Shown: in pieces, positions 3,968 to 17,076 of the stretch
How the letters are laid out: each line of letters begins with the position of its first letter
Position numbering within the stretch: position 1 is the stretch's first letter
Virus record (IMG/VR): IMGVR_UViG_3300027770_001980
Location: 1 to 64,000 of that record
DNA length: 64,000 nt
Strand: one strand, 5' to 3'
The notes under the pieces: model-generated
Told to the model about the DNA's origin: nothing
The model's input: only the letters and a program-made list of their open reading frames with translations
The model's database searches: none
Position numbers and translations under genes: made by a program

Positions 3968-3968
3968 A

Positions 3969-5029: not shown

Positions 5030-5095
5030 TAGTCACATACACAGCAGCAAAGTCAAAAATATTTTTGTTTTTTTGTTCAAAAATGCAAAAACAGG

Positions 5096-5124
5096 TTGAC
5101 AGCGATGCTAAATAAATGTATAAT
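5096..5124 (+). promoter_or_regulatory. sigma70 promoter P2 of tRNA array
   Basis: Perfect TTGACA-17-TATAAT. Confidence 0.85.
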
Positions 5125-5182
5125 TAACACATACGCAGCAATAATGCAGTGTATGAAACTTAAAGGTAAATTGGAAAGTAAA

Positions 5183-5329
5183 ATGAACAACGTATCGTAT
5201 ATTAGACAACATTGCTCAATAGCCAAACAGGCAGGCTTTATGCCCTCTGCTTGGTTAGCGATTAATAGTCTGTCATATGATCGCACACCAGAGGGGAATA
5301 CCCCGGGGTCCCAGGAGACCAGAGTGTAA
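5183..5329 (+). CDS. putative attenuator leader peptide (48 aa, all 20 amino acids)
   Basis: MNNVSYIRQHCSIAKQAGFMPSAWLAINSLSYDRTPEGNTPGSQETRV*; lies between promoter and terminator. ORF track starts it upstream at a TTG inside the -35 box. Confidence 0.7.
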   Translation: MNNVSYIRQHCSIAKQAGFMPSAWLAINSLSYDRTPEGNTPGSQETRV

Positions 5330-5358
5330 TAAAATACACGCTAACTCCAAAGGACCCC
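5305..5358 (+). promoter_or_regulatory. putative antiterminator hairpin
   Basis: GGGGTCC (5305-11)/GGACCCC (5352-58), GGAG/CTCC and GTGTA/TACAC; sequesters the 5' arm of the terminator. Confidence 0.7.
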
Positions 5359-5382
5359 AGGACTAAACACCCTGGGGTTTTT
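5354..5382 (+). terminator. intrinsic terminator (attenuator)
   Basis: ACCCCAGG-actaaacac-CCTGGGGT followed by a T-tract. Confidence 0.8.
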
Positions 5383-5494
5383 GCTTTTCGAGTGTGAAGA
5401 TACAGGTAACGAGGACCTGACAGCGCACTATAAACATGCTGTAAACGGGCGGTGACGAGGATGGCTTATCTTCTTGTAGATAAAAAAATTCGTC

Positions 5495-5587
5495 ATATTA
5501 AAGCATATACTTGCCTGACTGTAAACGTCGTGGTAAACTACTAGAGAAAGGGGTTCGAATCCCCGGGACTGGTATGTGCTTTAATAT
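5495..5587 (+). repeat. inverted-repeat-bracketed cassette B1
   Basis: ATATTAAAGCATATAC / GTATGTGCTTTAATAT (16 bp); cargo has CTGTAAA and the T-arm GGGGTTCGAATCCCC. Confidence 0.75.
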
Positions 5588-5649
5588 ACACACTCGTTCT
5601 GAGTACATAGTACAAAGAGGCAGAAAGATAAACTGCTAGAGTGTGTTTT

Positions 5650-5735
5650 GGAGACGTGGCAGAGAGGTTGATTGCACCAGACTGTAAATCTGGCCCGTAA
5701 AAAGCACGATGGTTCGAATCCATCCGTCTCCACCA
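5650..5735 (+). tRNA. tRNA-Tyr(GTA)
   Basis: Cloverleaf, CCAGA-ctGTAaa-TCTGG, encoded CCA. Confidence 0.92.
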
Positions 5736-5741
5736 TATTTC

Positions 5742-5817
5742 GGGGGATTGGTATACTTGGCTAACACACCTGGTTTGCAACCAGGAGCAAACGGTTCGAA
5801 TCCGTTATCCTCCACCA
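5742..5817 (+). tRNA. tRNA-Ala(TGC)
   Basis: CCTGG-ttTGCaa-CCAGG, CCA. Confidence 0.9.
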
Positions 5818-5822
5818 AGTTT

Positions 5823-5896
5823 GCTCTGTTAGTATAATGGTATTACACCTGTTTTGTAATCAGGTTACGGCAGTTCGATTCTGTCACGGAGCACCA
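5823..5896 (+). tRNA. tRNA-Thr(TGT)
   Basis: ttTGTaa loop, TTCGATT, CCA. Confidence 0.88.
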
Positions 5897-5902
5897 AGTT
5901 AC

Positions 5903-5977
5903 GGCCTCATCATATAGTGGTTATTATACCGGCCTGTCTAGTCGGATATCGGAGTTCGATTCTCCGTGGGGTCGCCA
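5903..5977 (+). tRNA. tRNA-Asp(GTC)
   Basis: CCGGC-ctGTCta-GTCGG, CCA. Confidence 0.9.
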
Positions 5978-5982
5978 GTTTT

Positions 5983-6040
5983 AGGATAGCAACAGCAAAC
6001 TCAAAAATTTCAATGTTTATGAAACCAAAATGCTATCCTG
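5983..6040 (+). ncRNA. CAGCAA-handle RNA E1
   Basis: AGGATAGCA/TGCTATCCT helix, ACAGCAAA, hairpin TTTCA-atGTTta-TGAAA. Confidence 0.7.
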
Positions 6041-6049
6041 TTTTATTAT

Positions 6050-6124
6050 ACTCCGGTCGTCTAGTGGCTAGGACGCCAGCCTTTCAAGTTGGAGAAGCGG
6101 GATCGAAACCCGTTCGGAGTACCA
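6050..6124 (+). tRNA. tRNA-Glu(TTC)
   Basis: CCAGC-ctTTCaa-GTTGG; variant T-loop ATCGAAA. Confidence 0.88.
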
Positions 6125-6132
6125 AGTTTTAT

Positions 6133-6210
6133 CTGTGTGTGAGAAAGTCTGGTTAATCTACTCGCCTTGGAAGTGAGAAATCGTAGGTTCAAATCCTACC
6201 ACACAGACCA
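6133..6210 (+). tRNA. tRNA-Pro(TGG)
   Basis: CTCGC-ctTGGaa-GTGAG, CCA. Confidence 0.88.
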
Positions 6211-6215
6211 TATAT

Positions 6216-6290
6216 GCCGTTGTAGTCCTCTGGGAGGGCACTGGATTGTCTATCCAATTAAGGCGGGTTCGATTCCCGTCGACGGCGCCA
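6216..6290 (+). tRNA. tRNA-Asp(GTC), copy 2
   Basis: TGGA-ttGTCta-TCCA, CCA. Confidence 0.88.
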
Positions 6291-6297
6291 AGTTTAT

Positions 6298-6373
6298 GTC
6301 CCATTCATCTAGAGGCCTAGGATAGTACCCTTTCACGGTATTCACAGCGGTTCGAATCCGCTATGGGACGCCA
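6298..6373 (+). tRNA. tRNA-Glu(TTC), copy 2
   Basis: GTACC-ctTTCac-GGTAT, CCA. Confidence 0.9.
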
Positions 6374-6380
6374 AGTTTAT

Positions 6381-6451
6381 GCGCTGGATTGACATTGCGA
6401 GTTGGATTTGAAGCCAAACGCAGACAGGTTTGATTCCTGTCAGGTGCACCA
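6381..6451 (+). pseudogene. degenerate tRNA-like gene, anticodon unclear
   Basis: ACCA end, T-arm CAGG-TTTGATT-CCTG, 8-nt loop ATTTGAAG, poor D-arm. Confidence 0.55.
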
Positions 6452-6458
6452 AGTTTAT

Positions 6459-6535
6459 GCGTGGTTAGCTCAGTTTGGTAGAGCATCGGGTTGCCAACTC
6501 GAAGGTCGCAGGTTCGAACCCTGTACCCCGCACCA
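6459..6535 (+). tRNA. tRNA-Gly(GCC)
   Basis: TCGGG-ttGCCaa-CTCGA, CCA. Confidence 0.9.
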
Positions 6536-6544
6536 AAAATTTAT

Positions 6545-6622
6545 GTCTAGGTGGCGGAGTGGCCCAACGCGACAGTCTGCAAAACTGTAACACCGTCGGT
6601 TCAAATCCGACCCTAGATTCCA
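6545..6622 (+). tRNA. tRNA-Cys(GCA)
   Basis: ACAGT-ctGCAaa-ACTGT, TCCA. Confidence 0.9.
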
Positions 6623-6626
6623 ATAT

Positions 6627-6703
6627 GCGTGGTTAGTGTTTAACGGCGAGCACGGTTGGCTTCCACCCAGCAAGAAGGAGTTCGAATCTCCTACCCCGCA
6701 CCA
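6627..6703 (+). tRNA. tRNA-Gly(TCC)
   Basis: GTTGG-ctTCCac-CCAGC, CCA. Confidence 0.88.
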
Positions 6704-6707
6704 AGTT

Positions 6708-6902
6708 TTGTAAGTGTCAGCAAGAGAAAGACTCGCTAGGAAGATTCTTCGAAGGTCGACCCAGTGTAAAAGTAGATCCGGTTCGAATCCGGCTTGGCTA
6801 CGGAGCGTCTATGTCGAGTATCCCGAGTGACTTACCTCCTCCCGTCCGGACTTGCATGAATCGGGTGAATGGTTGCGATTACAGAGGTGCAACTACTTAC
6901 AA
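6708..6902 (+). ncRNA. large CAGCAA-handle RNA E2 (~195 nt)
   Basis: TTGTAAGTG/TACTTACAA closing helix, TCAGCAAG, internal T-arm CCGG-TTCGAAT-CCGG. Confidence 0.6.
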
Positions 6903-6906
6903 ATTC

Positions 6907-7069
6907 AATAAGTAAGAATCAAGTGGAAAGCAAGAGCCACAAAGTAAATAGTAGACTATCATGCTACCGCGGTAGTCTTTGCAGTGTATACTGCGTCGGT
7001 AAAGTGTAACAGCGGAATCGAGAAACACTGGGGTAAGAGTCCCAACGTAGCGGTAAGCAGAAATTTATT
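6907..7069 (+). ncRNA. unassigned structured RNA
   Basis: AATAAGT/ATTTATT closure; AGACTATC/GGTAGTCT, GCAGT/ACTGC and GGG-GTAAGAGT-CCC hairpins. Confidence 0.45.
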
Positions 7070-7144
7070 CCGCAGTAGCTCAGTCGGTAGAGTAGTTGAC
7101 TGTTAATCAATTGGTCCCTGGTTCGAGCCCAGGCTGTGGAGCCA
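7069..7144 (+). tRNA. tRNA-Asn(GTT)
   Basis: GTTGA-ctGTTaa-TCAAT, GCCA. Confidence 0.92.
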
Positions 7145-7150
7145 AGTTTA

Positions 7151-7211
7151 AGGATGCTAACCGCAAATTTATACTCTGAACTTTTAATTCAACCAGTAAA
7201 AATGCATCCTG
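7151..7211 (+). ncRNA. CAGCAA-handle RNA E3
   Basis: AGGATGC/GCATCCT helix, ACCGCAAA, hairpin TGAA-ctTTTaa-TTCA. Confidence 0.7.
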
Positions 7212-7222
7212 TTTTATTTTGT

Positions 7223-7298
7223 TGGGGTGTCGCCTAGTGGCCTAAGGCAACGGTCTTTGAAATCGTCATCATGAGTTCGAATCTCATCTCCCCTGCCA
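7223..7298 (+). tRNA. tRNA-Gln(TTG)
   Basis: ACGGT-ctTTGaa-ATCGT, GCCA; acceptor stem has mismatches. Confidence 0.82.
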
Positions 7299-7317
7299 AA
7301 CATATTAGGAGAATGCA

Positions 7318-7446
7318 ATGGCTCACAAGCAACAAGGTATTCTAACAAAGAGTCCCCAATGGTGGAAGCACCTCAAGGACTGGAAACGTGTGTTCTGGAA
7401 ATCAGAACGCCAAGCACAGAAACGTAACATTAAACAAGGAGAATGA
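7318..7446 (+). CDS. small Trp/Lys-rich protein (42 aa)
   Basis: AGGAG RBS; MAHKQQGILTKSPQWWKHLKDWKRVFWKSERQAQKRNIKQGE*. Confidence 0.6.
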   Translation: MAHKQQGILTKSPQWWKHLKDWKRVFWKSERQAQKRNIKQGE

Positions 7447-7537
7447 CATGAAACGTTCAGGTAAACGATAGTGTCAATCTTAGATCCCGTATATGGTCTA
7501 GGGTTGGCACATTAAAGACAATTTAATATGCAATCAA

Positions 7538-7611
7538 CCCTCACAAACATTAAGGTGATGTAACCGGCTCTTAACCGGTAAAACACGGATCGTTACCGTG
7601 GTGTGGGACCA
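7538..7611 (+). tRNA. tRNA-Lys(CTT)
   Basis: ACCGG-ctCTTaa-CCGGT; variant T-loop ATCGTTA. Confidence 0.8.
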
Positions 7612-7617
7612 ATATAT

Positions 7618-7691
7618 GGGATCGTAACTTAAAAGTAAAGTATCGGACTTTTAATCCGACTAAGAAGGGGCAGTACCTTCCGGTCTCACCA
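7618..7691 (+). tRNA. tRNA-Lys(TTT)
   Basis: TCGGA-ctTTTaa-TCCGA; variant T-loop GGCAGTA. Confidence 0.82.
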
Positions 7692-7770
7692 TATAAAAAC
7701 ACATTGTCCTAGGCTGTGACCTAGTCCATCAGAAGTCCTTTGAGACAGAAACAATGTGTTTCTATATGGT
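7689..7770 (+). repeat. inverted-repeat-bracketed cassette B2
   Basis: CCATATAAAAACACATTGT / ACAATGTGTTCTCTATATGG; cargo hairpin CTAGG-CTGTGA-CCTAG. Confidence 0.75.
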
Positions 7771-7910
7771 AAAGAAGAAGCCGACATGGAAAGGTAGTGC
7801 AAAGGTATACAGTTGGTCTGGTTCGAAACAGAGTAAACTGATTGTATAATGAGCGTAGCACAACCCGCATCGCACGGGTAGTTAGTGGGTTCGATTCCCA
7901 TCTTTGTTAT
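7767..7910 (+). ncRNA. unassigned structured RNA with two T-loop mimics
   Basis: TCTG-GTTCGAAA-CAGA, ACCCG-catcgca-CGGGT, GTGGG-TTCGATT-CCCAT. Confidence 0.45.
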
Positions 7911-8025
7911 CATACATGAACACATTCAACGGTAAACAGGATACCTGGCAACTGGACGCAGGGGCTATCCCGAAGATGTAGGGCACTACCACCGTAAAGT
8001 CAGGAAATGAGTGTGTTCCTATATG
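7911..8025 (+). repeat. inverted-repeat-bracketed cassette B3
   Basis: CATACATGAACACATTCA / TGAGTGTGTTCCTATATG; inner ACGGT/ACCGT helix. Confidence 0.7.
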
Positions 8026-8100
8026 GTGTCTTTAGTGTAGTGGCCTGCACCCTGCTCTGTGAAAGCGGTAGTACCGGATCGATACCGGTAAGGCACCCCA
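8025..8100 (+). tRNA. tRNA-His(GTG)
   Basis: G-1 and C73, CTGCT-ctGTGaa-AGCGG. Confidence 0.88.
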
Positions 8101-8143
8101 ATATTTATTGTAGAGCATAAATACATTTATAAGGTGCTCTGCA

Positions 8144-8527
8144 ATGTTAAACTCAATATGTAAAAATTGTTCAAAAGAATTTATTAAAGGTCGAAATACA
8201 ACAGGGACATACTGTTCACTACCTTGCACTTTTGAATCTCAAAAAAAAGAAAGAAGAGAAAATTTCTTAGAAGGAAAAATGGTTAACCGTGGATTAATGA
8301 AACAACATATGGTTGATATTCACAGTTGGCAATGTATGTGTTGTAAAAACACTGAATGGTTAGGAGTGCCAATTCCGTTGGAGTTGGATCACATTGATGG
8401 TAATGCAGGAGACAATCGACCTGAAAATTTGCGATTGCTATGTCCAAACTGCCATGCACAGACTCCAACACATAAAGCAAAGAATAAAGGCAATGGCCGC
8501 GGGAGTCGCGGATTGCCCTGGTATTAA
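8144..8527 (+). CDS. HNH endonuclease
   Basis: LELDHIDGNAGDNRPENLRLLCPNCHAQT with Cys pairs. Confidence 0.85.
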   Translation: MLNSICKNCSKEFIKGRNTTGTYCSLPCTFESQKKERRENFLEGKMVNRGLMKQHMVDIHSWQCMCCKNTEWLGVPIPLELDHIDGNAGDNRPENLRLLCPNCHAQTPTHKAKNKGNGRGSRGLPWY

Positions 8528-8529
8528 TT

Positions 8530-8603
8530 CCTCTTGTAGTTAAATGGTATAACGGCCTCTTGATAAGTGGTTATTACAAGTTCGATTCTTGTCGAGAGGA
8601 CCA
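8530..8603 (+). tRNA. tRNA-Ile(GAT)
   Basis: ttGATaa loop, ACCA. Confidence 0.85.
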
Positions 8604-8610
8604 AGTTTAC

Positions 8611-8685
8611 GCCTGGTTAGTTCAGCGGAAGAACGTCTGCCCGATTAGCGGAATGTTGTAGGTTCGACTCCTACACCGGGTACCA
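8611..8685 (+). tRNA. tRNA-Ile(GAT)-like with variant loop
   Basis: TCTGC-ccGATta-GCGGA (C33, U37); otherwise a normal cloverleaf. Confidence 0.7.
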
Positions 8686-8692
8686 AATCAAT

Positions 8693-8767
8693 GCGCCCGT
8701 AGTATAATGGATAATACACTAGGCTACGAACTTAGGAATGGTGGTTCGATTCCATCCGGGCGCACCA
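8693..8767 (+). tRNA. tRNA-Arg(ACG)
   Basis: CTAGG-ctACGaa-CTTAG. Confidence 0.9.
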
Positions 8768-8775
8768 ATAGTTAA

Positions 8776-8865
8776 GGAAGCGTGGCAGAGCCCGGCTTAT
8801 TGCAGCAGTCTTGAAAACTGCCGACCCGAAAGGGTCCGTGAGTTCGAATCTCACCGCTTCCGCCA
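8776..8865 (+). tRNA. tRNA-Ser(TGA)
   Basis: GCAGT-ctTGAaa-ACTGC, long variable arm. Confidence 0.92.
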
Positions 8866-8882
8866 ATACAATAAATAAGTCT

Positions 8883-9626
8883 ATGCGAATACATGAACTT
8901 ATTGTAGAAACTACTGAGGAAGATCGTGCTATCATTAGCCTTGCTGATGTTATCTATAAGGATCTACAGCAATATGCTGATACAGAATTAGACTACGATG
9001 AAACAGGTGTGATGCACATTGGACGCATCGGTGATCTGTTTGATACTCCGATTCCCGGACTTGATCGCGTGAGATTAGAAATATCTTCAGATGAGTCCAT
9101 AGTGGATCTGGCACGTAGACTTCACGGTAAGGCTACACCGTCAGATAGTCATTTTGGACAATGGGATCCTATGGAGAAGGCGATATCTTTAAATGCTGAT
9201 TACTTGAGCTCTAATCGTATGCGTAGTGTCATAGCACATGAATTAAGACATGCCATGGACGATATGAAATCGTTGAATAGGGCTAACCAAAGTACACGAT
9301 ATCGTACAGCAAGGAAGCCCGAGCATCAAGCAGATAAAGATGGTGCTTATCAAGCACAACCTGCAGAAATCAATGCTAGGTTTATCGAAGCGTTGAATGT
9401 GTTAGTGCCCGTCATACCAAAGTTGGCAAATTTAGAACCTGCTGCATTTAGAACAAAGATGACAGCATATATAAACAAAGCATTTGAACTTAAAGACATC
9501 GCAGATTATTATCCAGAAAAGACAGCAAGTCCACACTATAAGAGATTGCTGCAACGAGCATGGGCTTTTATTGAAAAAGAGCTGGCTCACATACGATCAC
9601 AAACAGTTGACACAGCGGCGGAATAA
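8883..9626 (+). CDS. putative Zn metallopeptidase-like protein
   Basis: HExxH (AHELRH) plus downstream EINA; start moved to MRIHEL because the track start lies inside the tRNA. Confidence 0.55.
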   Translation: MRIHELIVETTEEDRAIISLADVIYKDLQQYADTELDYDETGVMHIGRIGDLFDTPIPGLDRVRLEISSDESIVDLARRLHGKATPSDSHFGQWDPMEKAISLNADYLSSNRMRSVIAHELRHAMDDMKSLNRANQSTRYRTARKPEHQADKDGAYQAQPAEINARFIEALNVLVPVIPKLANLEPAAFRTKMTAYINKAFELKDIADYYPEKTASPHYKRLLQRAWAFIEKELAHIRSQTVDTAAE

Positions 9627-9635
9627 GTATATAAT
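9607..9635 (+). promoter_or_regulatory. sigma70 promoter (internal to array)
   Basis: TTGACA-17-TATAAT. Confidence 0.8.
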
Positions 9636-9641
9636 ATACTT

Positions 9642-9750
9642 GCGACCGTGAGTGGAACATGGCAGACCTCCGGACCGGGGATTCTCGGCGAGGGATGGGG
9701 CGAAGTCTTAGACACAGCCTTTGTAGGTTCAAACCCTACCGGTCGTACCA
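9642..9750 (+). ncRNA. Leu-type tRNA-like RNA with expanded central domain (109 nt)
   Basis: GCGACCG/CGGTCGT acceptor + ACCA, Leu-like D-loop, T-arm; no canonical anticodon arm. Confidence 0.6.
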
Positions 9751-9762
9751 GTTAAGAATTAA

Positions 9763-9851
9763 GGAATGGTCCCATAATGGTATTGGAGCAGATTGCTAAT
9801 CTGTCGGTCGTTTAATACGGCTTCCGAGTTCGAGTCTCGGTCATTCCGCCA
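9763..9851 (+). tRNA. tRNA-Ser(GCT)
   Basis: GCAGA-ttGCTaa-TCTGT, long variable arm. Confidence 0.9.
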
Positions 9852-9872
9852 AGTTGATAAAAGAAGAATTAT

Positions 9873-10670
9873 ATGATTTTAGATTGTGTTACATTTTTTA
9901 ATGAGTTAGAATTATTAGAGGGTAGATTAGAATACCTGTATGATACCGTAGACTATTTTATCATAGTTGAAAGTGATACAACTCATAGTGGTCACCCTAA
10001 ACCTTTAAACTATTTGCCTAACATACAGAGATATAAAAAATATCTGGACAAGATAATTTATTTTCCGTATCCGGCAGAAATTAAAGATCTAAATATCGAT
10101 CAAACTCTTGATAAATTTGATTACGATTCCGCACATTGGAAAATAGAGAAAAGACAAAGAAGTCATATTCTTAATGCGATAAAATTTTTCAAGGATGACG
10201 ATATAGTATTGATCAGTGATGTTGATGAGATTCCTTCTAAATCTGCTATCGAGATAGCATCCGAGCAGTTAGGAAAATCAGCAGCAGCATTTTCATTATC
10301 ACAGGATTTTTTCTTTTATAATTTTGCTCAGAGGCAAAGTTTTCCGTGGAAAGGTACTGTTGTTTCTACAAACAAATTTGTTCAACAACAAGGTCCGCAG
10401 TGGCTTCGTGATATGCGTTGGGATATTCCAACAATATTTCAAGGTGGATATCATTTGAGCTACTGGGGTGATCCAGAACGTATCGCAACTAAGATACAGA
10501 ACTTTGCACATCAGGAACTCAACAAAGAAACCTTTACAGATACCGAACGTATAAAAGAAAGAATTAAATCAGGTAACGATCCGTTTGATCGTCAACCATT
10601 GATTCCTGTAGAACCGGAATCAATTCCAAAAGACATTTATGACATATTCAACAAATATGGCAGTAGTTAA
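9873..10670 (+). CDS. GT17-family (GnT-III-like) glycosyltransferase
   Basis: FFNELELLEGRL, VESDTTHSG, SDVDEIP, GYHLSY, KIQNFAHQE. Confidence 0.8.
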   Translation: MILDCVTFFNELELLEGRLEYLYDTVDYFIIVESDTTHSGHPKPLNYLPNIQRYKKYLDKIIYFPYPAEIKDLNIDQTLDKFDYDSAHWKIEKRQRSHILNAIKFFKDDDIVLISDVDEIPSKSAIEIASEQLGKSAAAFSLSQDFFFYNFAQRQSFPWKGTVVSTNKFVQQQGPQWLRDMRWDIPTIFQGGYHLSYWGDPERIATKIQNFAHQELNKETFTDTERIKERIKSGNDPFDRQPLIPVEPESIPKDIYDIFNKYGSS

Positions 10671-10674
10671 TTTG

Positions 10675-10763
10675 TATCTCTGGTGTAATGGTATTGGAGC
10701 GGATTGCTAATCCGTCGAGTTGCGAAAGCAGCTTTCTGAGTTCGAGTCTCAGTCATTCCGCCA
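10675..10763 (+). pseudogene. chimeric tRNA-Ser(GCT) with foreign 5' end
   Basis: D-loop to CCA resembles the 9763 Ser; 5' TATCTCT cannot pair with 3' TCATTCC. Confidence 0.7.
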
Positions 10764-10770
10764 AATAAAT

Positions 10771-10847
10771 GAGTCAGTAGTTCCAATTGGCAGAACGTTG
10801 GTCTCCAAAACCAAATGTTGTAGGTTCAAATCCTACCTGGCTCGCCA
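10771..10847 (+). tRNA. tRNA-Trp(CCA)
   Basis: TTGGT-ctCCAaa-ACCAA. Confidence 0.92.
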
Positions 10848-10871
10848 AACAAAGATAGTAAATAATAGTAT

Positions 10872-10945
10872 GCGGGTATGATGTAAAGGTAACCTGAAAC
10901 CTTGCCAAGGTTTATTTGAGAGTTCGATTCTCTCTACCCGCTCCA
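10872..10945 (+). tRNA. tRNA-Gly(GCC), copy 2
   Basis: AAACC-ttGCCaa-GGTTT. Confidence 0.9.
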
Positions 10946-10949
10946 AATA

Positions 10950-11045
10950 GGCCGGACCTGTATCCATATTCCGGCTCCGCTGACGCGAAAACAGGATGGG
11001 CTGCGCTCACGGGGTTTGATTGTTTCCCGACACAACAATAACAAT
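10950..11045 (+). ncRNA. unassigned pseudoknot-forming RNA
   Basis: GCCGGA/TCCGGC stem whose loop CCTGT can pair with ACAGG (10991-95). Confidence 0.4.
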
Positions 11046-11059
11046 CACCAAACATATGG

Positions 11060-11104
11060 CCTCACCCTCTAGCAACATAGTTCTACGGTGAGGTTTTCTT
11101 TTTT
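11060..11104 (+). terminator. terminator-like hairpin inside array
   Basis: CCTCACC/GGTGAGG with a long loop, followed by a T-rich tract. Confidence 0.45.
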
Positions 11105-11165
11105 AGGATAGCAACAGCAAACATTTAAAAACTTTTCTTGAACAAAAGCCAAAAATGCTATCCTG
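11105..11165 (+). ncRNA. CAGCAA-handle RNA E4
   Basis: AGGATAGCA/TGCTATCCT helix, ACAGCAAA, hairpin CTTTT-ctTGAac-AAAAG. Confidence 0.7.
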
Positions 11166-11174
11166 TTTTATTAT

Positions 11175-11250
11175 GCCATAGTAGCTCCAATGGTAGAGCA
11201 GCGGACTGAAAATTCGTGTGTTGCTGGTTCGAATCCAGCCTATGGTACCA
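11175..11250 (+). tRNA. tRNA-Phe(GAA)
   Basis: GCGGA-ctGAAaa-TTCGT. Confidence 0.92.
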
Positions 11251-11258
11251 ATTTATAA

Positions 11259-11266
11259 TATAAATA
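11259..11266 (+). promoter_or_regulatory. T4-like late promoter TATAAATA
   Basis: Exact octamer just upstream of the ATG; it also occurs at 13684, 49547, 52268 (+) and 27083, 44861, 51988 (-). Confidence 0.6.
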
Positions 11267-11271
11267 TTTTT

Positions 11272-11991
11272 ATGAAAATTGCAATATTACTATCCGGACA
11301 ACCAAGATTTACTCAAGAGTTTCAATTATTTTTAGATAATTTAGTAGGTTATGATCAAGCAGATTGGTTTGTTTACATGACCAATAATAATCACGATCCT
11401 TTTAAAGATAATCGCATTAAAATTCCAGAGACCTGGATAAATTATGAAATAGATTGGGCCAGAGAGACTATAACAAGAAATCTTCCTCCTAACAATTTTC
11501 TCAGACGTTTCGAAATATCGAATGTACACGAACAAATTTTTCCAACTCTTCGAGAAGAACATCTATCTGGTAATCAAGCTATTTTCAAAATGCACTATAA
11601 TATATTTAAAACAAATCAATTAAGAGAAGAATATGAAACCTCTTATAATTTTAAATACGATGCAATTGTTAGAGCCCGCCCCGATGTTGGACTTAATCAG
11701 ATAATAGATCTTCGAAAATTTGATTTGTCGACCAGGGGAGTCTTTATGCCTTGCCCTTTTTATGGACACCCAGGGAGAGAGTCTAATGATTTGATTGGAT
11801 TTGGTAATTCGGAGGTCATGTCTATTTACAGTAATGCCTTACATCATTTCAAAGAATATAGTGATGCTGGAGAAATAGTTTGCCCTGAAACACTATTATC
11901 ACGGCACTTGATTACAAATAATGTATCACGTATAAAATCTGATTTTAGTCACATTTTTCGAACTCTGCCTTTAGATCCTAAATGGTTTTGA
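11272..11991 (+). CDS. glycosyltransferase-like protein, paralog 1
   Basis: MKIAILLSGQPRF...KYDAIVRARPD...NDLIGFG; start reassigned out of tRNA-Phe. Confidence 0.6.
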   Translation: MKIAILLSGQPRFTQEFQLFLDNLVGYDQADWFVYMTNNNHDPFKDNRIKIPETWINYEIDWARETITRNLPPNNFLRRFEISNVHEQIFPTLREEHLSGNQAIFKMHYNIFKTNQLREEYETSYNFKYDAIVRARPDVGLNQIIDLRKFDLSTRGVFMPCPFYGHPGRESNDLIGFGNSEVMSIYSNALHHFKEYSDAGEIVCPETLLSRHLITNNVSRIKSDFSHIFRTLPLDPKWF

Positions 11992-12010
11992 GTGTCTGAA
12001 CTAATTACAT

Positions 12011-12097
12011 GGAAGATAGAAGTGCCGGGCACTAAGCAACTTGGAAAGTTGTTCCACTCTGAAAGGGGTGACAGTTCGACTCTGTTATCTTCCTCCA
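12011..12097 (+). tRNA. tRNA-Ser(GGA)
   Basis: GCAAC-ttGGAaa-GTTGT, long variable arm, atypical D-arm. Confidence 0.8.
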
Positions 12098-12117
12098 ACA
12101 CACTAAAGGAGCATAAC

Positions 12118-12180
12118 ATGTTAGTAATAGGATTATTAGTAATCATGGGTATGCTCTATTTGATTATTAGAAAGTTATAA
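12118..12180 (+). CDS. 20-aa hydrophobic peptide
   Basis: AAGGAG RBS; MLVIGLLVIMGMLYLIIRKL*. Confidence 0.5.
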   Translation: MLVIGLLVIMGMLYLIIRKL

Positions 12181-12181
12181 T

Positions 12182-12257
12182 GGTAGAGTAGCATAGCGGC
12201 TAATGCACCAGCTTCATACGCTGTCGATCGTGGGTTCGAGTCCCACCTCTACTACCA
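12182..12257 (+). tRNA. tRNA-Met(CAT)
   Basis: CAGC-ttCATac-GCTG. Confidence 0.85.
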
Positions 12258-12262
12258 ATCAA

Positions 12263-12382
12263 TGTCGTTGTCGTCTAATGGTAGGACGCTTATAAAAGGT
12301 TATCCTGTTAAGGATACAGTCAGCACAATCAAATTCCATGTCAAGGAAGAGATCTGGGTTCGAATCCCAGCTGCGACCCCCA
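12263..12382 (+). ncRNA. tRNA-like RNA with branched anticodon domain (~120 nt)
   Basis: Acceptor, D-arm, T-arm and CCA present; the centre holds TATCC-TGTTAA-GGATA and TTCC-atGTCaa-GGAA hairpins. Confidence 0.65.
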
Positions 12383-12388
12383 GTTTAT

Positions 12389-12464
12389 GTACATGAGCCC
12401 GAAGATTGAGGGTACCGTTAATTGAGACGGCGAAAGGCGATTGAGATGATACCCATGTACGCCA
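12389..12464 (+). ncRNA. 76-nt tRNA-like RNA lacking a TPsiC loop
   Basis: Perfect GTACATG/CATGTAC + GCCA; GCCC/GGGT and CCGTT/GACGG arms. Confidence 0.55.
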
Positions 12465-12466
12465 AG

Positions 12467-12615
12467 TTTCGAGATAGACGTAGAGATCGAGTCCCCTGTA
12501 CGCTAGTGCCCTATTTCTTGAGCATGACACACCAGTAGCAGTATCGGGTCAAGCAAAACTCTCTCATACGAGACAAACCAATGAGTCCTTGAGAAAGATA
12601 GTTGGAGGCTCGAAA
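12467..12615 (+). ncRNA. unassigned structured RNA (~150 nt)
   Basis: TTTCGAG/CTCGAAA closure; CTTGA/TCAAG and CTCAT/ATGAG helices. Confidence 0.45.
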
Positions 12616-12623
12616 ACCTATAT

Positions 12624-12709
12624 GCTCTGGTGCAGGGAATTGGAAGACCGGCAACGTTGAGAACGTTGTGACCTAACAGGTGTGGGTTCGAGTCCCACCC
12701 AGAGCACCA
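12624..12709 (+). tRNA. tRNA-Leu(GAG)
   Basis: CAACG-ttGAGaa-CGTTG. Confidence 0.88.
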
Positions 12710-12713
12710 ATTT

Positions 12714-12787
12714 AGTTCCTTAGTTTAATGGCAGAACACTACCTCGACACGGTGACAATGAAAGTTCGATTCTTTCAGGAACTACCA
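12714..12787 (+). tRNA. tRNA-Val(GAC)
   Basis: TACC-tcGACac-GGTG (C33 variant). Confidence 0.8.
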
Positions 12788-12877
12788 TATATAAAAACAT
12801 ATTAGGCCCTCGGTCGTAGACTTGAGTTGCGGGTATAGTGCCTTCCAAGCCGTGGACTCGAATGTGTTTTTATATAT
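12787..12877 (+). repeat. inverted-repeat-bracketed cassette B4
   Basis: ATATATAAAAACATATT / AATGTGTTTTTATATAT (17 bp); cargo has tRNA-Gly-like GCGGGTATAGT and GC-ctTCCaa-GC. Confidence 0.75.
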
Positions 12878-12905
12878 GAAAGTTCGATTCTTTCAGGAAC
12901 TACCA
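12876..12905 (+). repeat. 30-bp direct repeat of the tRNA-Val 3' end
   Basis: ATGAAAGTTCGATTCTTTCAGGAACTACCA, identical to 12758-12787. Confidence 0.9.
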
Positions 12906-12906
12906 A

Positions 12907-12981
12907 CTCTCTATAGTTCAATGGATAGAACACATTCCTCCTAAGAATGGGATGCAGGTTCGATTCCTGCTGGAGAGACCA
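12907..12981 (+). tRNA. tRNA-Arg(CCT)
   Basis: CATTC-ctCCTaa-GAATG. Confidence 0.92.
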
Positions 12982-12993
12982 AATAAATATTAT

Positions 12994-13070
12994 GCCCCGT
13001 TACGCTAATTGGTAGTGCGGATTCTCTCAAAAGGAGTTGGCTGTCTGTTCGAATCAGACACGGGGTACCA
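12994..13070 (+). tRNA. tRNA-Leu(CAA), short variable arm
   Basis: ATTCT-ctCAAaa-GGAGT; 77 nt. Confidence 0.78.
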
Positions 13071-13075
13071 CTTAT

Positions 13076-13150
13076 CGGTCTTTAGTGAAATGGATATCAT
13101 CTTTGTCTTCGAAACAAAAGTTGTGGGTTCGATCCCTGCAAGACCGGCCA
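13076..13150 (+). tRNA. tRNA-Arg(TCG)
   Basis: TTTGT-ctTCGaa-ACAAA. Confidence 0.9.
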
Positions 13151-13154
13151 ATCT

Positions 13155-13228
13155 GCTCCTATAGGTAAATGGTATACCAGCACTTTGGTAAAGTGCAATT
13201 ACAAGTTCGATTCTTGTTAGGAGCACCA
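13155..13228 (+). tRNA. tRNA-Thr(GGT)
   Basis: GCACT-ttGGTaa-AGTGC. Confidence 0.9.
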
Positions 13229-13236
13229 AAAAAAAC

Positions 13237-13265
13237 TTGACACACCGACAGAAATACAGTATAAT
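13237..13265 (+). promoter_or_regulatory. sigma70 promoter (internal to array)
   Basis: TTGACA-17-TATAAT. Confidence 0.8.
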
Positions 13266-13330
13266 TACTACATAGACAGCAAACGATAGAGTTAGTTGTT
13301 GTGTGTTCATTAACAATACAAGTTGGTTTT

Positions 13331-13414
13331 GCGGGTGTGGTGGAATGGTATACACAGCAGACTTAAAATCTGCCGCTGAAAAGCATGCCGGTTCGAGTCC
13401 GGCCACCCGCACCA
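13331..13414 (+). tRNA. tRNA-Leu(TAA)
   Basis: GCAGA-ctTAAaa-TCTGC. Confidence 0.92.
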
Positions 13415-13518
13415 TATTGAAACACATTGTGGAGAGCACTGTGTAGATTGAGAAGGTTTGATTCCGACTCACTACATCACTCGGTATCCTGCGGCCGCAA
13501 CAGTGTGCTTCAATATGG
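13412..13518 (+). repeat. inverted-repeat-bracketed cassette B5
   Basis: CCATATTGAAACACATTGT / ACAGTGTGCTTCAATATGG; cargo TGTAG/CTACA helix with GGTTTGATTCC T-loop mimic. Confidence 0.75.
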
Positions 13519-13522
13519 TGTT

Positions 13523-13641
13523 ATATTAAAATATACTTTTCGTCTCCAGTAGCCCAAACCCGGGGGAATCGCATATTGAGAATGTGCATAGCACAACGGT
13601 ACAGCAAGCATAAGACACTTGTTGGAAGTATGTTTTAATAT
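13523..13641 (+). repeat. inverted-repeat-bracketed cassette B6
   Basis: ATATTAAAATATACTT / AAGTATGTTTTAATAT; cargo GCATATT/AATGTGC hairpin. Confidence 0.72.
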
Positions 13642-13647
13642 GATTCC

Positions 13648-14429: not shown

Positions 14430-14488
14430 TGGTAAAACGGCGGATTTCTACTCCCTAAATAGCAGTTCGATTCTGTTACGCCGGACCA
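14415..14488 (+). pseudogene. chimeric tRNA: foreign 5' half + 3' half of Arg(TCT)
   Basis: 3' TCTAC-TCCCT...ACGCCGG-ACCA complements 13648-13680, not the adjacent ACCCCTAT...GGCGGATT. Confidence 0.75.
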
Positions 14489-17041: not shown

Positions 17042-17076
17042 AAATATTTAGTAAATAGAGTTTTAATGTATTAAGA

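What the first reader, a model, noticed from the sequence alone, without database searches (positions are those of the whole stretch)
5495..13641. Family of inverted-repeat 'stalk + cargo' cassettes between tRNAs
Seen: at least six cassettes (5495-5587, 7689-7770, 7911-8025, 12787-12877, 13412-13518, 13523-13641; a shorter one at 5588-5646) are closed by 16-19 bp AT-rich inverted repeats with a shared consensus (ATAT..AAA.CACATT / AATGTG.TTT..ATAT). Arm mismatches are mostly G-U, which suggests selection on RNA pairing. Cargos are unrelated but often tRNA-derived: Tyr loop CTGTAAA plus a T-arm, His loop CTGTGAC, Gly loop CTTCCAA, a T-loop. Three start at the preceding tRNA's CCA end, and in B2 and B5 the ATATGG right arm pairs with that CCA. 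Inference: these are RNase III-type processing stalks releasing small RNAs, as in rRNA operons, or MITE-like mobile units.
Basis: partly seen in the sequence, partly recalled or inferred. Interest (0 to 1): 0.75.

Follow-up and report, generated by a model that had tools for sequence, protein, structure and literature searches.

The report
Conserved RNA clamp carrying swappable small RNAs
In the tRNA gene array of this freshwater T4-like phage, six small structured RNAs are each closed by the same AU-rich helix that starts at the CCA end of the preceding tRNA, and the same helix carries more than 100 unrelated cargo RNAs in hundreds of uncultured phages, a modular RNA system I could not find in Rfam or in the paper library.

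Summary
All six cassettes exist at the stated coordinates. A covariance model finds exactly these six in the 221-kb genome; the short hairpin 5588-5646 is not a member. In 596 Gb of prokaryote genomes it gives three chance hits.

Across 212 cassettes the stalk has 15 nearly invariant pairs. It carries a fixed-polarity A.C at pair 5 and U.G at pair 13, true covariation at pairs 4 and 15, and outer pairs with N73-C74-C75 of an upstream tRNA. In 123 of 212 the first stalk base is A76 of a called tRNA.

Half to three quarters of tRNA-Lys(UUU) genes are followed by a cassette, about a fifth of Glu(UUC) and Gln(UUG), and 1-2% of all others.

Cargo falls into 126 unrelated families with internal compensatory changes, and it is swapped between identical flanks.

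Best reading: stalk-clamped small RNAs, co-transcribed with tRNAs and cut out by processing. RNase III is plausible but untested. A classical MITE, a tRNA pseudogene and a Ro60-bound Y RNA each fail at least one defining test. Cargo function is unknown.

The parts
5495..5587 (+). Cassette A: diverged stalk (16-17 bp) plus a 61-nt cargo with two hairpins and a T-arm (GGGGTTCGAATCCCC). It lies about 370 nt downstream of the promoter at 5096 and is not preceded by a tRNA.
   Evidence: (I7). CM R1 scores 23.5 bits on + against 15.2 on -. The cargo family is shared with L021, L025, L061, L093 and L128: 36 pairs, 7 with double compensatory changes.
7688..7770 (+). Cassette B2: canonical stalk ACCAUAUAAAAACACAUUGU / ACAAUGUGUUUCUAUAUGGU, including ACCA of tRNA-Lys(UUU) and the A.C at pair 5, plus a 43-nt cargo.
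   Evidence: I3; 60.1 bits. The same cargo occurs in L042 and L103 between different flanks.
7618..7688 (+). tRNA-Lys(UUU). Its 3' ACCA forms the outer pairs of the B2 stalk.
   Evidence: Rfam tRNA 48.9 bits; anticodon loop CTTTTAA read. ARAGORN misses it.
7771..7910 (+). tRNA-like element (T-arm, weak acceptor, ends UCA) between B2 and B3. B2's right arm and B3's left arm can also pair with each other around it.
   Evidence: Rfam tRNA 27.1 bits, E 0.044. (I2). 94% identical with its flanking arms in L025.
7909..8025 (+). Cassette B3: stalk with three non-pairs plus a 79-nt cargo. It ends one base before the ARAGORN start of tRNA-His, at its G-1.
   Evidence: I9; 49.1 bits; cargo homologue in L103.
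8026..8100 (+). tRNA-His(GUG), directly 3' of B3.
12714..12787 (+). tRNA-Val(GAC). Its CCA is the start of B4.
12785..12879 (+). Cassette B4: stalk CCAUAUAUAAAAACAUAUU / AAUGUGUUUUUAUAUAUG plus a 57-nt cargo.
   Evidence: I1; 54.2 bits. Cargo family of about 8 in other phages, usually between tRNA-Lys and tRNA-Met: 33 pairs, 5 compensatory.
12876..12905 (+). 30-nt direct repeat of 12758-12787 (T-arm, 3' acceptor strand and CCA of tRNA-Val) on the far side of B4. It is a footprint of the recombination or insertion that placed B4 here.
   Evidence: Read.
13331..13414 (+). tRNA-Leu(UAA). Its CACCA end pairs with UGGUG after B5.
   Evidence: I4.
13410..13520 (+). Cassette B5: 21-bp stalk of the UUGAAAC/GCUUCAA variant plus a 69-nt cargo with a T-loop-like hairpin.
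   Evidence: I4; 54.7 bits; cargo 99% identical in L025 and also present in L097.
13521..13643 (+). Cassette B6: diverged stalk (16 WC + 3 GU) plus an 87-nt cargo, in tandem behind B5. The core arms are 6 nt apart, and the extended stalks as listed here abut.
   Evidence: (I8). CM R1 scores 32.2 bits although B6 was not in the training set. A related copy sits in a contig of an RNA library (record 16).
5096..5124 (+). Perfect sigma-70 consensus promoter (TTGACA-17-TATAAT) driving the operon that holds A, B2 and B3.
9607..9635 (+). Perfect sigma-70 consensus promoter upstream of the segment that holds B4.
13237..13265 (+). Perfect sigma-70 consensus promoter driving tRNA-Leu(UAA), B5 and B6.

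Best explanation
The cassettes are genes for small structured RNAs of about 65-160 nt, embedded in the phage's tRNA operons.

Each RNA has two parts. The first is a nearly invariant AU-rich closing helix, the 'stalk': 5'-AUAU(A/U)(A/G)AAACACAUU paired with AGUGUGUUU(C/U)(U/A)AUAU-3'. The second is a freely exchangeable structured cargo.

In the primary transcript the stalk is seeded on the preceding tRNA. Its first base is A76, and N73-C74-C75 pair with a UGG that follows the right arm and is often the 5' end of the next tRNA.

Inferred mechanism:
- Host sigma-70 RNA polymerase transcribes tRNA-cassette-tRNA runs.
- The helix, 18 pairs in the consensus and about 20 positions long, marks the unit boundaries.
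- It is opened by a double-strand-specific endonuclease (RNase III class), or bounded by RNase P at the next tRNA plus a cut after CCA.
- The tRNA 3' end is trimmed back to CCA.
- The cargo is left with both ends locked in the remaining helix, which should make it exonuclease-resistant.

The cargo is the effector and differs from phage to phage. The conserved arms also act as homology handles through which cargo is swapped between co-infecting phages.

The strong coupling to tRNA-Lys(UUU), Glu(UUC) and Gln(UUG) says the stalk also serves those tRNAs: their maturation, their dosage or their protection.

Shown here: structure, polarity, junction precision, conservation, modularity and the tRNA bias. 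Inferred: transcription, the processing enzymes, stability and any cargo function.
For: Structure and selection on pairing:
- RNAalifold on 47 cassettes with different cargo gives an 18-pair stalk, 10 pairs with double changes.
- My pair table over 195 unique cassettes: pair 4 is A-U 124 / U-A 63. The unconserved pair 15 is still paired in 83% (AU 74, CG 26, GC 26, UA 20).
- Pair 13 is U.G 150 / U-A 26 / C-G 19 and never a mismatch.
- The diverged window copies A and B6 keep pairing through double substitutions.

Polarity:
- With orientation set only by the neighbouring tRNAs, the asymmetric pairs read U.G 150: C.A 0 and A.C 93: G.U 0.
- The CM scores the + strand higher for the five copies scored on both strands (B6 was reported on + only).
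- T-arm motifs in cargo occur 14 times in sense and 0 in antisense, and GGTTCGA is the only enriched cargo word.

Context:
- 1941 tRNAs lie in the 1.13 Mb of motif-selected loci.
- 123 of 212 cassettes start on A76 of a same-strand tRNA, and 47 are followed at once by a tRNA.
- The five perfect (12/12) sigma-70 consensus promoters in the array all lie on the + strand.

Cargo is structured RNA: compensatory changes in the A and B4 families and others.

Modularity:
- There are 126 cargo clusters among 197 unique cassettes.
- L016, L023 and L075 have near-identical or identical tRNA-Lys and tRNA-Met flanks and arms (92-100% over 50 nt on each side) but unrelated cargo.
- In 95 of 152 same-cargo pairs both flanks are unrelated.

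tRNA bias:
- Motif-selected loci: Lys(UUU) 60/83 genes, or 17/28 clusters at 90% similarity; Gln 11/43; Glu 11/44; others 29/926.
- Replicated in loci chosen through an unrelated protein: 11/22, 6/32, 5/27 and 7/958, with Fisher p of 1e-15 and 2e-10.

Breadth: the canonical stalk occurs in T4-like phages whose major capsid proteins are 31% identical.
Against: - No RNA ends were obtained. The only read-laying run used assembled contigs of metatranscriptomes. It shows depth over tRNA and small-RNA segments and none over the ORFs, but no start or end pile-ups, and DNA carry-over or cross-matching tRNAs cannot be excluded.
- Near-invariance of 15 bp between distant phages is more than pairing alone requires. 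It could reflect a DNA-level site or recent horizontal spread.
- The conserved A.C would be a G.U on the other strand, so pairing statistics alone do not fix the strand. Polarity and context do.
- No RNase III gene is present in six cassette-bearing genomes, two of them complete, and the host is unknown.
- If an RNase III-type staggered cut left A76 as the tRNA's 3' end, my geometric reasoning (not a tool result) puts the opposite cut one base inside a tRNA that starts directly after the right arm. The simplest 'one cut matures both' model therefore does not fit.
- No cargo function is shown.
Confidence: 0.7

Rival explanations
1. DNA-level mobile or recombination element. The arms are terminal inverted repeats or site-specific recombination sites, and the ATAT ends hide a TA or ATAT target duplication. 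The units insert at CCA-TAT-GG junctions between tRNA genes, carrying captured DNA as cargo.
For: - The arms are almost invariant in phages with 31% MCP identity.
- Cargo is swapped between identical flanks, and the same cargo lies between unrelated flanks.
- B4 is bracketed by a 30-nt direct repeat of the tRNA-Val 3' part.
- Short AT-rich spacers such as CCA-TATAT-G are common empty junctions in this array.
- HNH endonuclease genes sit in the array.
Against: - One polarity only relative to tRNA transcription (150:0 and 93:0).
- Never found outside tRNA arrays.
- Cargo has its own conserved secondary structure with compensatory changes.
- Pairing is kept at unconserved positions and in diverged arms.
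- No arm pair encloses an ORF. Apparent long pairs are separate cassettes.
- 126 unrelated cargos is unlike any MITE family.
- Exchange can be explained by homologous recombination through the arms in T4-like phages.
Confidence: 0.12
2. Y RNA-like partners of a Ro60-type protein. The stalk is the protein-binding stem and the cargo is the effector module, as in bacterial YrlA RNAs.
For: - The architecture matches the description of Y RNAs: 80-130 nt, a long stem made by the two ends, a variable module that is tRNA-like in some (PMC4201824).
- Cassette A and about 15% of cargo families have a T-arm.
- The window encodes a Ro60-fold protein at 18911-20326, at the edge of the array. The AF2 model has pLDDT 91.9. 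The top 13 PDB matches are all Ro60/TROVE proteins, with E from 2.5e-7 to 6.6e-5 and TM from 0.36 to 0.64. It has a MIDAS DxSxS motif.
- Relatives of that protein sit next to tRNA arrays in 59 of 80 sampled viral loci, and 30 of the 51 arrays with at least 5 tRNAs hold canonical cassettes.
Against: - No co-occurrence rule in either direction. G004, G005, G020, G021 and G022 (94-100% complete) have cassettes but no relative of the window's Ro60-like protein; G004 and G005 were also searched with the family profile and with TROVE, without a match.
- G008 and G012 (91-92% complete) have the Ro-like protein but no cassette, even by CM.
- The Ro-binding motif GNCGAAN0-1G / GGUCCGA is absent from the stalk. 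It does occur in two other non-tRNA modules of the array, at 9699 and 12429.
- No Rfam Y-RNA family matched the cassettes at E up to 1.
- The complex prediction was not folded, so it is not evidence either way.
Confidence: 0.1
3. Decayed tRNA genes or neutral spacer hairpins. The cargos are remnants without function, and the stalk is only a spacer that helps to separate tRNAs.
For: - Some cargos contain a T-arm or anticodon-loop-like hairpins.
- tRNA arrays in these phages are scrambled and full of duplications.
- B4 is flanked by a partial tRNA-Val copy.
Against: - ARAGORN and the Rfam tRNA model do not call them, even at E of 1 or less.
- 85% of cargo families have no tRNA word.
- Cargo families are 80-99% conserved between phages whose flanks are unrelated, and they keep their hairpins by compensatory change. 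This is not neutral decay.
Confidence: 0.05

Closest known systems
Phage T4 species 1 and species 2 stable RNAs (rnaC, rnaD)
   Same: - Small stable RNAs of unknown function encoded inside the tRNA cluster of a T4-type phage.
- They start a few nucleotides after the CCA of a tRNA or of the preceding RNA.
- rnaC ends in a T-arm plus a short acceptor-like stem, like cassette A.
- From my own memory, not checked here: species 1 RNA is cut by E. coli RNase III in vitro (Paddock et al. 1976).
   Different: T4's RNAs have no AU-rich closing helix of the conserved sequence, no modular cargo exchange and no link to tRNA-Lys/Glu/Gln. No sequence similarity was seen on reading them, but I did not run a formal comparison.
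Processing stalks of bacterial rRNA operons and phage T7 RNase III sites
   Same: Flanking sequences pair into a helix of about 20 bp that encloses the RNA to be released from a polycistronic transcript that also holds tRNAs. Non-Watson-Crick positions occur inside the helix.
   Different: Here the helix is nearly invariant in sequence across distant phages, starts exactly at a tRNA CCA end and encloses 40-130-nt cargos of more than 100 kinds. Cleavage by RNase III is not shown.
Bacterial Y RNAs (YrlA/YrlB) bound by Ro60/Rsr
   Same: A conserved long stem made by the 5' and 3' ends plus a variable, sometimes tRNA-like, module of similar size. A Ro60-fold protein is encoded at the edge of this very array.
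   Different: The Ro-binding sequence motif is absent. Cassettes and Ro-like genes do not co-occur across complete genomes. Y RNAs are not fused to tRNA CCA ends.
tRNA-spacer-derived small RNAs and virus tRNA-hairpin units (E. coli 3'ETS-leuZ; MHV68 tRNA-miRNA TMERs), cited from my own knowledge
   Same: Functional small RNAs are made as by-products of tRNA transcript processing, directly 3' of a tRNA.
   Different: Those are single loci without a shared clamp, without cargo diversity and without a tRNA-type rule.
Correia/NEMIS-type MITEs and the PeSL shuffling cassettes of T4-type phages, cited from my own knowledge
   Same: Inverted-repeat units that fold in RNA (Correia elements are reported to be RNase III substrates). 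In PeSL, conserved short regulatory motifs act as recombination handles for modular shuffling.
   Different: Correia elements have homogeneous interiors, occur genome-wide in both orientations and have TA duplications. PeSLs flank protein genes. Neither is seeded on tRNA ends.

Membership tests
RNase III processing stalk | A double-stranded RNA helix of about two turns (20 bp or more) formed by the sequences flanking the released RNA | tested here: met
   15 conserved pairs, plus paired position 15, plus 3-4 outer pairs with N73-C74-C75-A76. That is 18 pairs in the RNAalifold consensus and about 20 positions counting the A.C and position 16.
RNase III processing stalk | Staggered cleavage in the helix leaving 2-nt 3' overhangs | not testable with these tools
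   Only assembled contigs of RNA libraries were available, and no end pile-ups were reported.
RNase III processing stalk | RNase III available in the system | tested here: inconclusive
   No PF14622 match in G000-G005, two of them complete. The host enzyme could act, but the host is unknown.
MITE (miniature inverted-repeat transposable element) | Terminal inverted repeats | tested here: met
   Arms of 15-21 bp.
MITE (miniature inverted-repeat transposable element) | Copies of one family share their internal sequence | tested here: not met
   126 unrelated cargo clusters among 197 unique cassettes.
MITE (miniature inverted-repeat transposable element) | Dispersed insertion in either orientation, with target-site duplication | tested here: not met
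   Only in tRNA arrays and in one polarity. A duplication cannot be judged because the ATAT ends are self-complementary. No TSD-like direct repeat was seen apart from the 30-nt repeat at B4.
MITE (miniature inverted-repeat transposable element) | An autonomous partner with the same ends and a transposase | tested here: not met
   No arm pair encloses an ORF in 200 loci. Long pairs are separate cassettes. No dedicated transposase family search was run.
Y RNA / YrlA | 80-130 nt with a long stem formed by the 5' and 3' ends and a variable module | tested here: met
   Median 82 nt, range 66-159 measured ATAT to ATAT; folds.
Y RNA / YrlA | Ro-binding motif GNCGAAN0-1G (bacteria) or GGUCCGA (vertebrates) in the 5' strand of the stem | tested here: not met
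   The stalk 5' strand is AUAUAAAAACACAUU. The motif definition comes from PMC4201824. The motif is found only at 9699 and 12429, outside the cassettes, plus once at 19130 inside the Ro60-like ORF.
Y RNA / YrlA | Encoded with, and dependent on, a Ro60 orthologue | tested here: not met
   A Ro60-fold protein is present in this genome, but five 94-100% complete genomes with cassettes lack it, and two genomes 91-92% complete that have it lack cassettes.
tRNA gene or pseudogene | Cloverleaf recognised by ARAGORN or the Rfam tRNA model | tested here: not met
   No cassette is called, even at E of 1 or less. Only the T-arm of A gives a 12-bit fragment match.
T4 rnaC/rnaD stable RNAs | Small RNA gene inside the tRNA operon of a T4-type phage, following a CCA end directly or within a few nucleotides | tested here: met
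   Gp23-type capsid in G000; cassette positions; T4 layout.
T4 rnaC/rnaD stable RNAs | Sequence or structure homology to rnaC or rnaD | tested here: inconclusive
   T4 rnaC and rnaD were read and folded and show no AU stalk, but I ran no formal alignment or CM comparison. A blastn search of cultured phages with B2 alone gave only chance-level hits at E about 9.
Any Rfam family | Match to a curated covariance model | tested here: not met
   No non-tRNA family matches the cassettes in the window at E of 1 or less. Among the 150 matches listed for 20 related loci at E of 0.01 or less, the only substantial non-tRNA matches are GOLLD and tmRNA (the rest are sub-threshold matches lying on tRNA genes), and the listed GOLLD and tmRNA matches do not overlap the cassettes I checked.

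The most novel reading that the evidence does not exclude
The stalk cassettes are an exchangeable RNA arsenal tied to the three tRNAs that carry a 2-thiouridine-type wobble base (Lys-UUU, Glu-UUC, Gln-UUG). From my own knowledge, these are the usual victims of anticodon nucleases such as PrrC, PARIS AriB and gamma-toxin-like enzymes.

On this reading the phage co-expresses each replacement tRNA with a clamp-stabilised decoy or inhibitor RNA. Alternatively it keeps the tRNA as a 3'-masked pro-tRNA. Cargo is swapped between phages through the invariant arms as hosts change their defences.

A conserved, still unknown protein would read the invariant helix with its A.C and U.G signature.
Probability: 0.2. 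Interest if true: 0.95.

Novelty: categorically new. Interest (0 to 1): 0.85.

Why it matters
- Phage tRNA arrays are now read mainly as codon-usage aids or as spare parts against tRNA-cleaving defences. This finding says that, in a large group of freshwater T4-like phages, the arrays are also expression platforms for many kinds of small structured RNA.
- All of these RNAs are packaged in one invariant helix that is physically coupled to the ends of tRNA-Lys, Glu and Gln.
- It gives more than 100 new RNA families with a built-in marker for finding them.
- It gives a concrete, testable processing signal and a natural 'plug-in' scaffold for stable small RNAs.
- It offers a new handle on the 50-year-old question of what the non-tRNA RNAs in T4-type tRNA clusters are for.
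- The tRNA-type rule points to a link with wobble-uridine tRNA biology or with anticodon-nuclease defence, which can be tested directly.

Tried and rejected
- **Rfam.** Scans at gathering threshold and at E of 1 or less gave nothing on the cassettes.
- **Literature.** Searches for the arm sequences and for tRNA-array small RNAs found no description.
- **Antisense targets.** Searching the cargos against the phage genome gave only T-arm matches to other tRNAs, and the best reverse-strand matches were at chance level.
- **Shared cargo word.** The only enriched word is the T-loop, in about 15% of families. There is no anticodon-loop or GGA-type motif.
- **Remoulded tRNA-Lys.** The Glu and Gln tRNAs before cassettes are not remoulded Lys genes. 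They are bona fide Glu and Gln bodies.
- **Phage RNase III.** Absent from G000-G005. An RNA ligase (PF09414) is present in only 1 of the 5 related genomes searched; G000 itself was not searched for it.
- **Ro60 / Y RNA.** The protein fold is confirmed, but co-occurrence and the binding motif fail.
- **Complex prediction.** The Ro-like protein with B2 RNA was not folded by the tool and is no evidence.
- **Read laying.** Four metatranscriptome runs offered only assembled contigs. Depth is confined to tRNA and small-RNA segments, with no end information, so this is inconclusive.
- **Autonomous element.** A search for arms around an ORF found none.
- **Cultured phages.** A blastn search with B2 found no relative in 50,697 records, so no laboratory model was found. 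Arms of 15-17 nt alone would be below blastn's reach.
- **First hairpin scans.** My genome-wide hairpin scans that allowed G.U pairs were too permissive to be useful.

Full report
**1. What the window is**

The window is the first 64 kb of a 221,356-bp IMG/VR virus record (39% GC, CheckV completeness 62%). It encodes a T4-type major capsid protein (Pfam Gp23, E 3.6e-81), so it is a large T4-like myovirus. The sequencing runs that hold it are freshwater, lake and river metagenomes.

Between 5.6 and 18.5 kb lie 41 ARAGORN tRNAs, all on the + strand, plus a few more that only Rfam calls. One of those is a tRNA-Lys(UUU) at 7618-7688. Five perfect TTGACA-17-TATAAT promoters, all on the + strand, divide the array into operons.

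**2. The observation**

All six cassettes are there.
- They are the top inverted repeats of the region.
- Each folds with its arms as the closing helix, with z-scores of -2.5 to -4.7.
- The helices have 15-19 Watson-Crick pairs, 0-3 G.U and 0-3 mismatches.

A covariance model (R1) was built on 47 cassettes with different cargo. It finds B2, B5, B4 and B3 at 49-60 bits; these were in its training set. It also finds A (23.5 bits) and B6 (32.2 bits), which were not. It finds nothing else in the whole 221-kb record. The exact right-arm pattern likewise occurs only inside the array. The short hairpin 5588-5646 folds but has other arms and is not a member.

**3. It is a large family**

The same pattern over 596 Gb of prokaryote genomes gave six hits. 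Three are AT-rich chance matches with no tRNA nearby. Three lie on short MAG contigs packed with 9-21 tRNAs, which I read as mis-binned phage arrays.

The 125 viral loci hold 1941 tRNAs in 1.13 Mb. A relaxed arm search gives 212 non-redundant cassettes and 197 unique sequences.

**4. Anatomy of the stalk**

The left arm is A-U-A-U-(A/U)-(A/G)-A-A-A-C-A-C-A-U-U. The right arm is A-G-U-G-U-G-U-U-U-(C/U)-(U/A)-A-U-A-U. Orientation was taken from the neighbouring tRNAs alone.

| Position | Pairs observed |
|---|---|
| 0-3, 6-12, 14 | 91-100% Watson-Crick, nearly invariant in sequence |
| 4 | covaries: A-U 124, U-A 63 |
| 5 | A.C 93, G-C 46, A-U 32, never G.U |
| 13 | U.G 150, U-A 26, C-G 19, never unpaired |
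| 15 | no preferred sequence, but paired in 83%: AU 74, CG 26, GC 26, UA 20 |

Outside the arms, the two bases before the left arm are CC in about 80-88% of cassettes and the two after the right arm are GG in about 84-90%. The pairs are C75-G (162 of 195), C74-G (143) and N73-U (125 A-U and 17 G.U).

The first stalk base is the A76 of an ARAGORN tRNA on the same strand in 123 of 212 cassettes. Some 37 more have an NCCA upstream without a called tRNA. Ten follow another cassette after 8 nt. A tRNA starts directly after the right arm in 47. RNAalifold on 47 cassettes independently returns this 18-pair helix, with double changes at 10 pairs.

The fixed polarity of the two non-Watson-Crick pairs (150:0 and 93:0) shows that the element is read in one direction. 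That direction is the direction of tRNA transcription.

**5. The window's diverged copies argue for pairing rather than sequence**

Cassette A belongs to a cargo family whose other members carry stalks much closer to the canonical sequence. In A, the stalk differs from the canonical sequence by these changes, and every one keeps the helix:
- A-U to U-A at pair 4.
- A.C to A-U at pair 5.
- A-U to G-C at pair 8.
- C-G to U.G at pair 11.
- A matched one-base deletion on both sides.

B6 shows the same behaviour.

**6. Cargo**

The 197 unique cassettes fall into 126 blastn clusters. The only word enriched across clusters is the T-loop (GGTTCGA in 12 clusters, GGTTC in 23 of 126). T-arm hairpins occur 14 times in sense and never in antisense.

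Cargo families keep their hairpins by compensatory change. In the A family the T-stem reads G-C, U.G, C-G and A-U at one pair and G-C or A-U at the next, and hairpin 1 has an A-U to U-A swap. That family has 36 pairs in all, 7 of them with double changes. The B4 family has 33 pairs, 5 with double changes.

The cargos are therefore structured RNAs under selection, but most are not tRNA-like. No cargo matches an Rfam family in the window at E of 1 or less, nor among the matches listed for 20 related loci. None has significant antisense complementarity in the phage genome.

**7. Modularity**

Arrays of related phages share tRNAs and other RNA modules at 70-99% identity, but in scrambled order.
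- L016 and L075 have identical upstream sequence, tRNA-Lys, arms and downstream tRNA-Met, yet their cargos are unrelated, at 52 and 37 nt. L023 adds a third cargo at the same site, between flanks 92-96% identical.
- 134 cassette pairs share the upstream flank only and have unrelated cargo.
- In 95 of 152 same-cargo pairs both flanks are unrelated.
- In the window, B4 is bracketed by a 30-nt direct repeat of the tRNA-Val 3' part (12758-12787 and 12876-12905). In other phages its cargo family usually sits between tRNA-Lys and tRNA-Met.
- The canonical stalk occurs in complete 160-170-kb genomes and in the lineage of this record, whose full genome I extrapolate to more than 300 kb. Their capsid proteins are only 31% identical.

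**8. A tRNA-type rule**

| tRNA type | Motif-selected loci, genes | Same, clusters at about 90% similarity | Loci selected through an unrelated protein |
|---|---|---|---|
| Lys(UUU) | 60 of 83 | 17 of 28 | 11 of 22 |
| Glu(UUC) | 17 of 90 | 11 of 44 | 6 of 32 |
| Gln(UUG) | 13 of 78 | 11 of 43 | 5 of 27 |
| all others | 33 of 1649 | 29 of 926 | 7 of 958 |

For the independent sample, Fisher p is 1e-15 for Lys and 2e-10 for Glu plus Gln, not corrected for relatedness. The Glu and Gln genes are genuine, not recoded Lys genes.

From general knowledge, these three tRNAs carry the 5-substituted 2-thiouridine wobble base and are the classical substrates of several anticodon nucleases. In the window, B2 follows the tRNA-Lys(UUU).

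**9. How it most likely works**

Shown:
- A polar, transcribed-strand RNA helix seeded on tRNA 3' ends.
- Structured cargo.
- Modular exchange.
- The tRNA-type bias.

Inferred:
- The units are co-transcribed with tRNAs from the sigma-70 promoters.
- The precursor helix (18 pairs in the consensus) defines the boundaries.
- It is cut by a double-strand-specific endonuclease, or bounded by RNase P at the next tRNA and a cut after CCA.
- Exonucleases trim the tRNA back to CCA.
- The cargo keeps both ends in the residual helix and is thereby stabilised.

Tandem cassettes with no tRNA between them (B5-B6 here, and 10 elsewhere) cannot be separated by RNase P alone. This favours a stalk-directed cut.

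I put RNase III itself at about 0.35. The length fits, but no enzyme evidence exists and none of the six genomes searched for it encodes one. By my own geometric reasoning, a single staggered cut cannot mature both neighbours when the next tRNA starts directly after the arm.

The near-invariance of the arms and the conserved A.C and U.G pairs suggest a sequence-reading protein that remains unknown.

**10. RNA data**

Several freshwater metatranscriptome runs hold parts of 7610-8105. Laying the assembled contigs of four runs gave depth only over tRNA and small-RNA segments and none over the ORFs. One contig covers a B6 relative (13524-13640). Others run from tRNA-Lys into the left arm and then diverge. 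There was no end information. This is compatible with expression but not decisive.

**11. The Ro60 lead**

The ORF at 18911-20326 (DUF2828 plus DUF7788, 'RNA-binding protein' in PHROGs) folds with pLDDT 91.9. Its top 13 PDB matches are all Ro60/TROVE proteins, including a Thermus phage Ro60. It has a MIDAS vWA motif. Relatives lie beside tRNA arrays in 59 of 80 sampled viral loci.

Y RNAs share the architecture of 'conserved stem plus variable module' (PMC4201824). Even so:
- The Ro-binding motif is absent from the stalk.
- Five 94-100% complete genomes with cassettes lack this Ro-like protein.
- Two genomes 91-92% complete with the Ro-like protein lack cassettes, even by CM.

I therefore keep this as a rival at about 0.1 and list the protein as a separate finding.

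**12. Comparison and novelty**

The nearest known things are T4's own species 1 and 2 RNAs. They occupy the same kind of place, rnaC also ends in a T-arm, and their function is unknown. Also close are rRNA-operon or T7 processing stalks, Y RNAs, and tRNA-spacer small RNAs.

None of these combines an invariant CCA-seeded clamp, more than 100 exchangeable cargos and a Lys/Glu/Gln rule. Rfam and the paper library hold nothing matching. I searched only the open-access library and cannot exclude a description elsewhere.

On this basis I rate it categorically new, with the function of the cargo open.

Noticed in passing
window 18911-20326 (+): A 471-aa protein (DUF2828 + DUF7788) with a Ro60/TROVE ring plus vWA-MIDAS fold sits at the 3' edge of the tRNA array. 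The family is very abundant: 6146 representatives at 50% clustering, and at least 560 IMG/VR stretches. It usually lies beside phage tRNA arrays. Its RNA partner is unknown.
   Followed up: yes
window 9643-9752 and 12386-12458 (+): Two non-tRNA modules carry the bacterial Ro-binding motif GNCGAAN0-1G. The first has a 7-bp acceptor stem, a T-arm, ACCA and a roughly 60-nt insert, which is YrlA-like on paper. Single-sequence folds were not significant.
   Followed up: partly
window 5079-5390, 5391-5493, 6698-6912, 7430-7577, 12460-12623, 16827-17050: Further non-tRNA, non-coding modules are conserved at 68-85% identity in related phage arrays, but in scrambled order. They are probably more unknown small RNAs.
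   Followed up: no
window 5983-6047, 7147-7215, 11107-11170: Three copies of a roughly 65-nt element with inverted ends AGGATAGCA / TGCTATCCT followed by GTTTTATT. Each lies just upstream of a tRNA (Glu, Gln, Phe), and the element is also conserved in other phages.
   Followed up: no
window 7771-7910: A long tRNA-like element (Rfam tRNA 27 bits, ends UCA not CCA) lies between B2 and B3. B2's right arm and B3's left arm are complementary and could enclose it in an alternative stalk. It appears as 151-nt contigs in two runs filed as RNA-seq, one of which the tool flags as probably DNA.
   Followed up: partly
window 12264-12378 and 14422-14477: A tRNA with a roughly 40-nt insertion (Rfam 39 bits, missed by ARAGORN) and a truncated tRNA match. 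These may be intron-bearing or broken tRNAs.
   Followed up: no
window 5096, 9607, 13237, 14355, 15980 (+): Five perfect 12/12 sigma-70 consensus promoters, all on the tRNA strand. They imply very strong early transcription by unmodified host polymerase and a host with canonical sigma-70 recognition.
   Followed up: partly
window 8144-8527, 15467-15895, 13797-14429: Two HNH homing-endonuclease ORFs and an endonuclease-like ORF are interspersed in the array. T4 has segB at the analogous place.
   Followed up: partly
L040 812-1112, 2633-3098, 3105-3188; L033 2321-2676: Related arrays carry a GOLLD RNA and a permuted tmRNA. In L040 a stalk cassette begins a few nucleotides after the Rfam GOLLD match ends, on a CCACCA sequence.
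   Followed up: no
window 283-5011: Upstream of the array lies a cluster of a B12-binding radical SAM enzyme, a GT2 glycosyltransferase, a HAD-nucleotidyltransferase fusion and an FkbM methyltransferase. GT17-like and DUF7796 genes lie inside the array. This may be a sugar or DNA-modification pathway.
   Followed up: no
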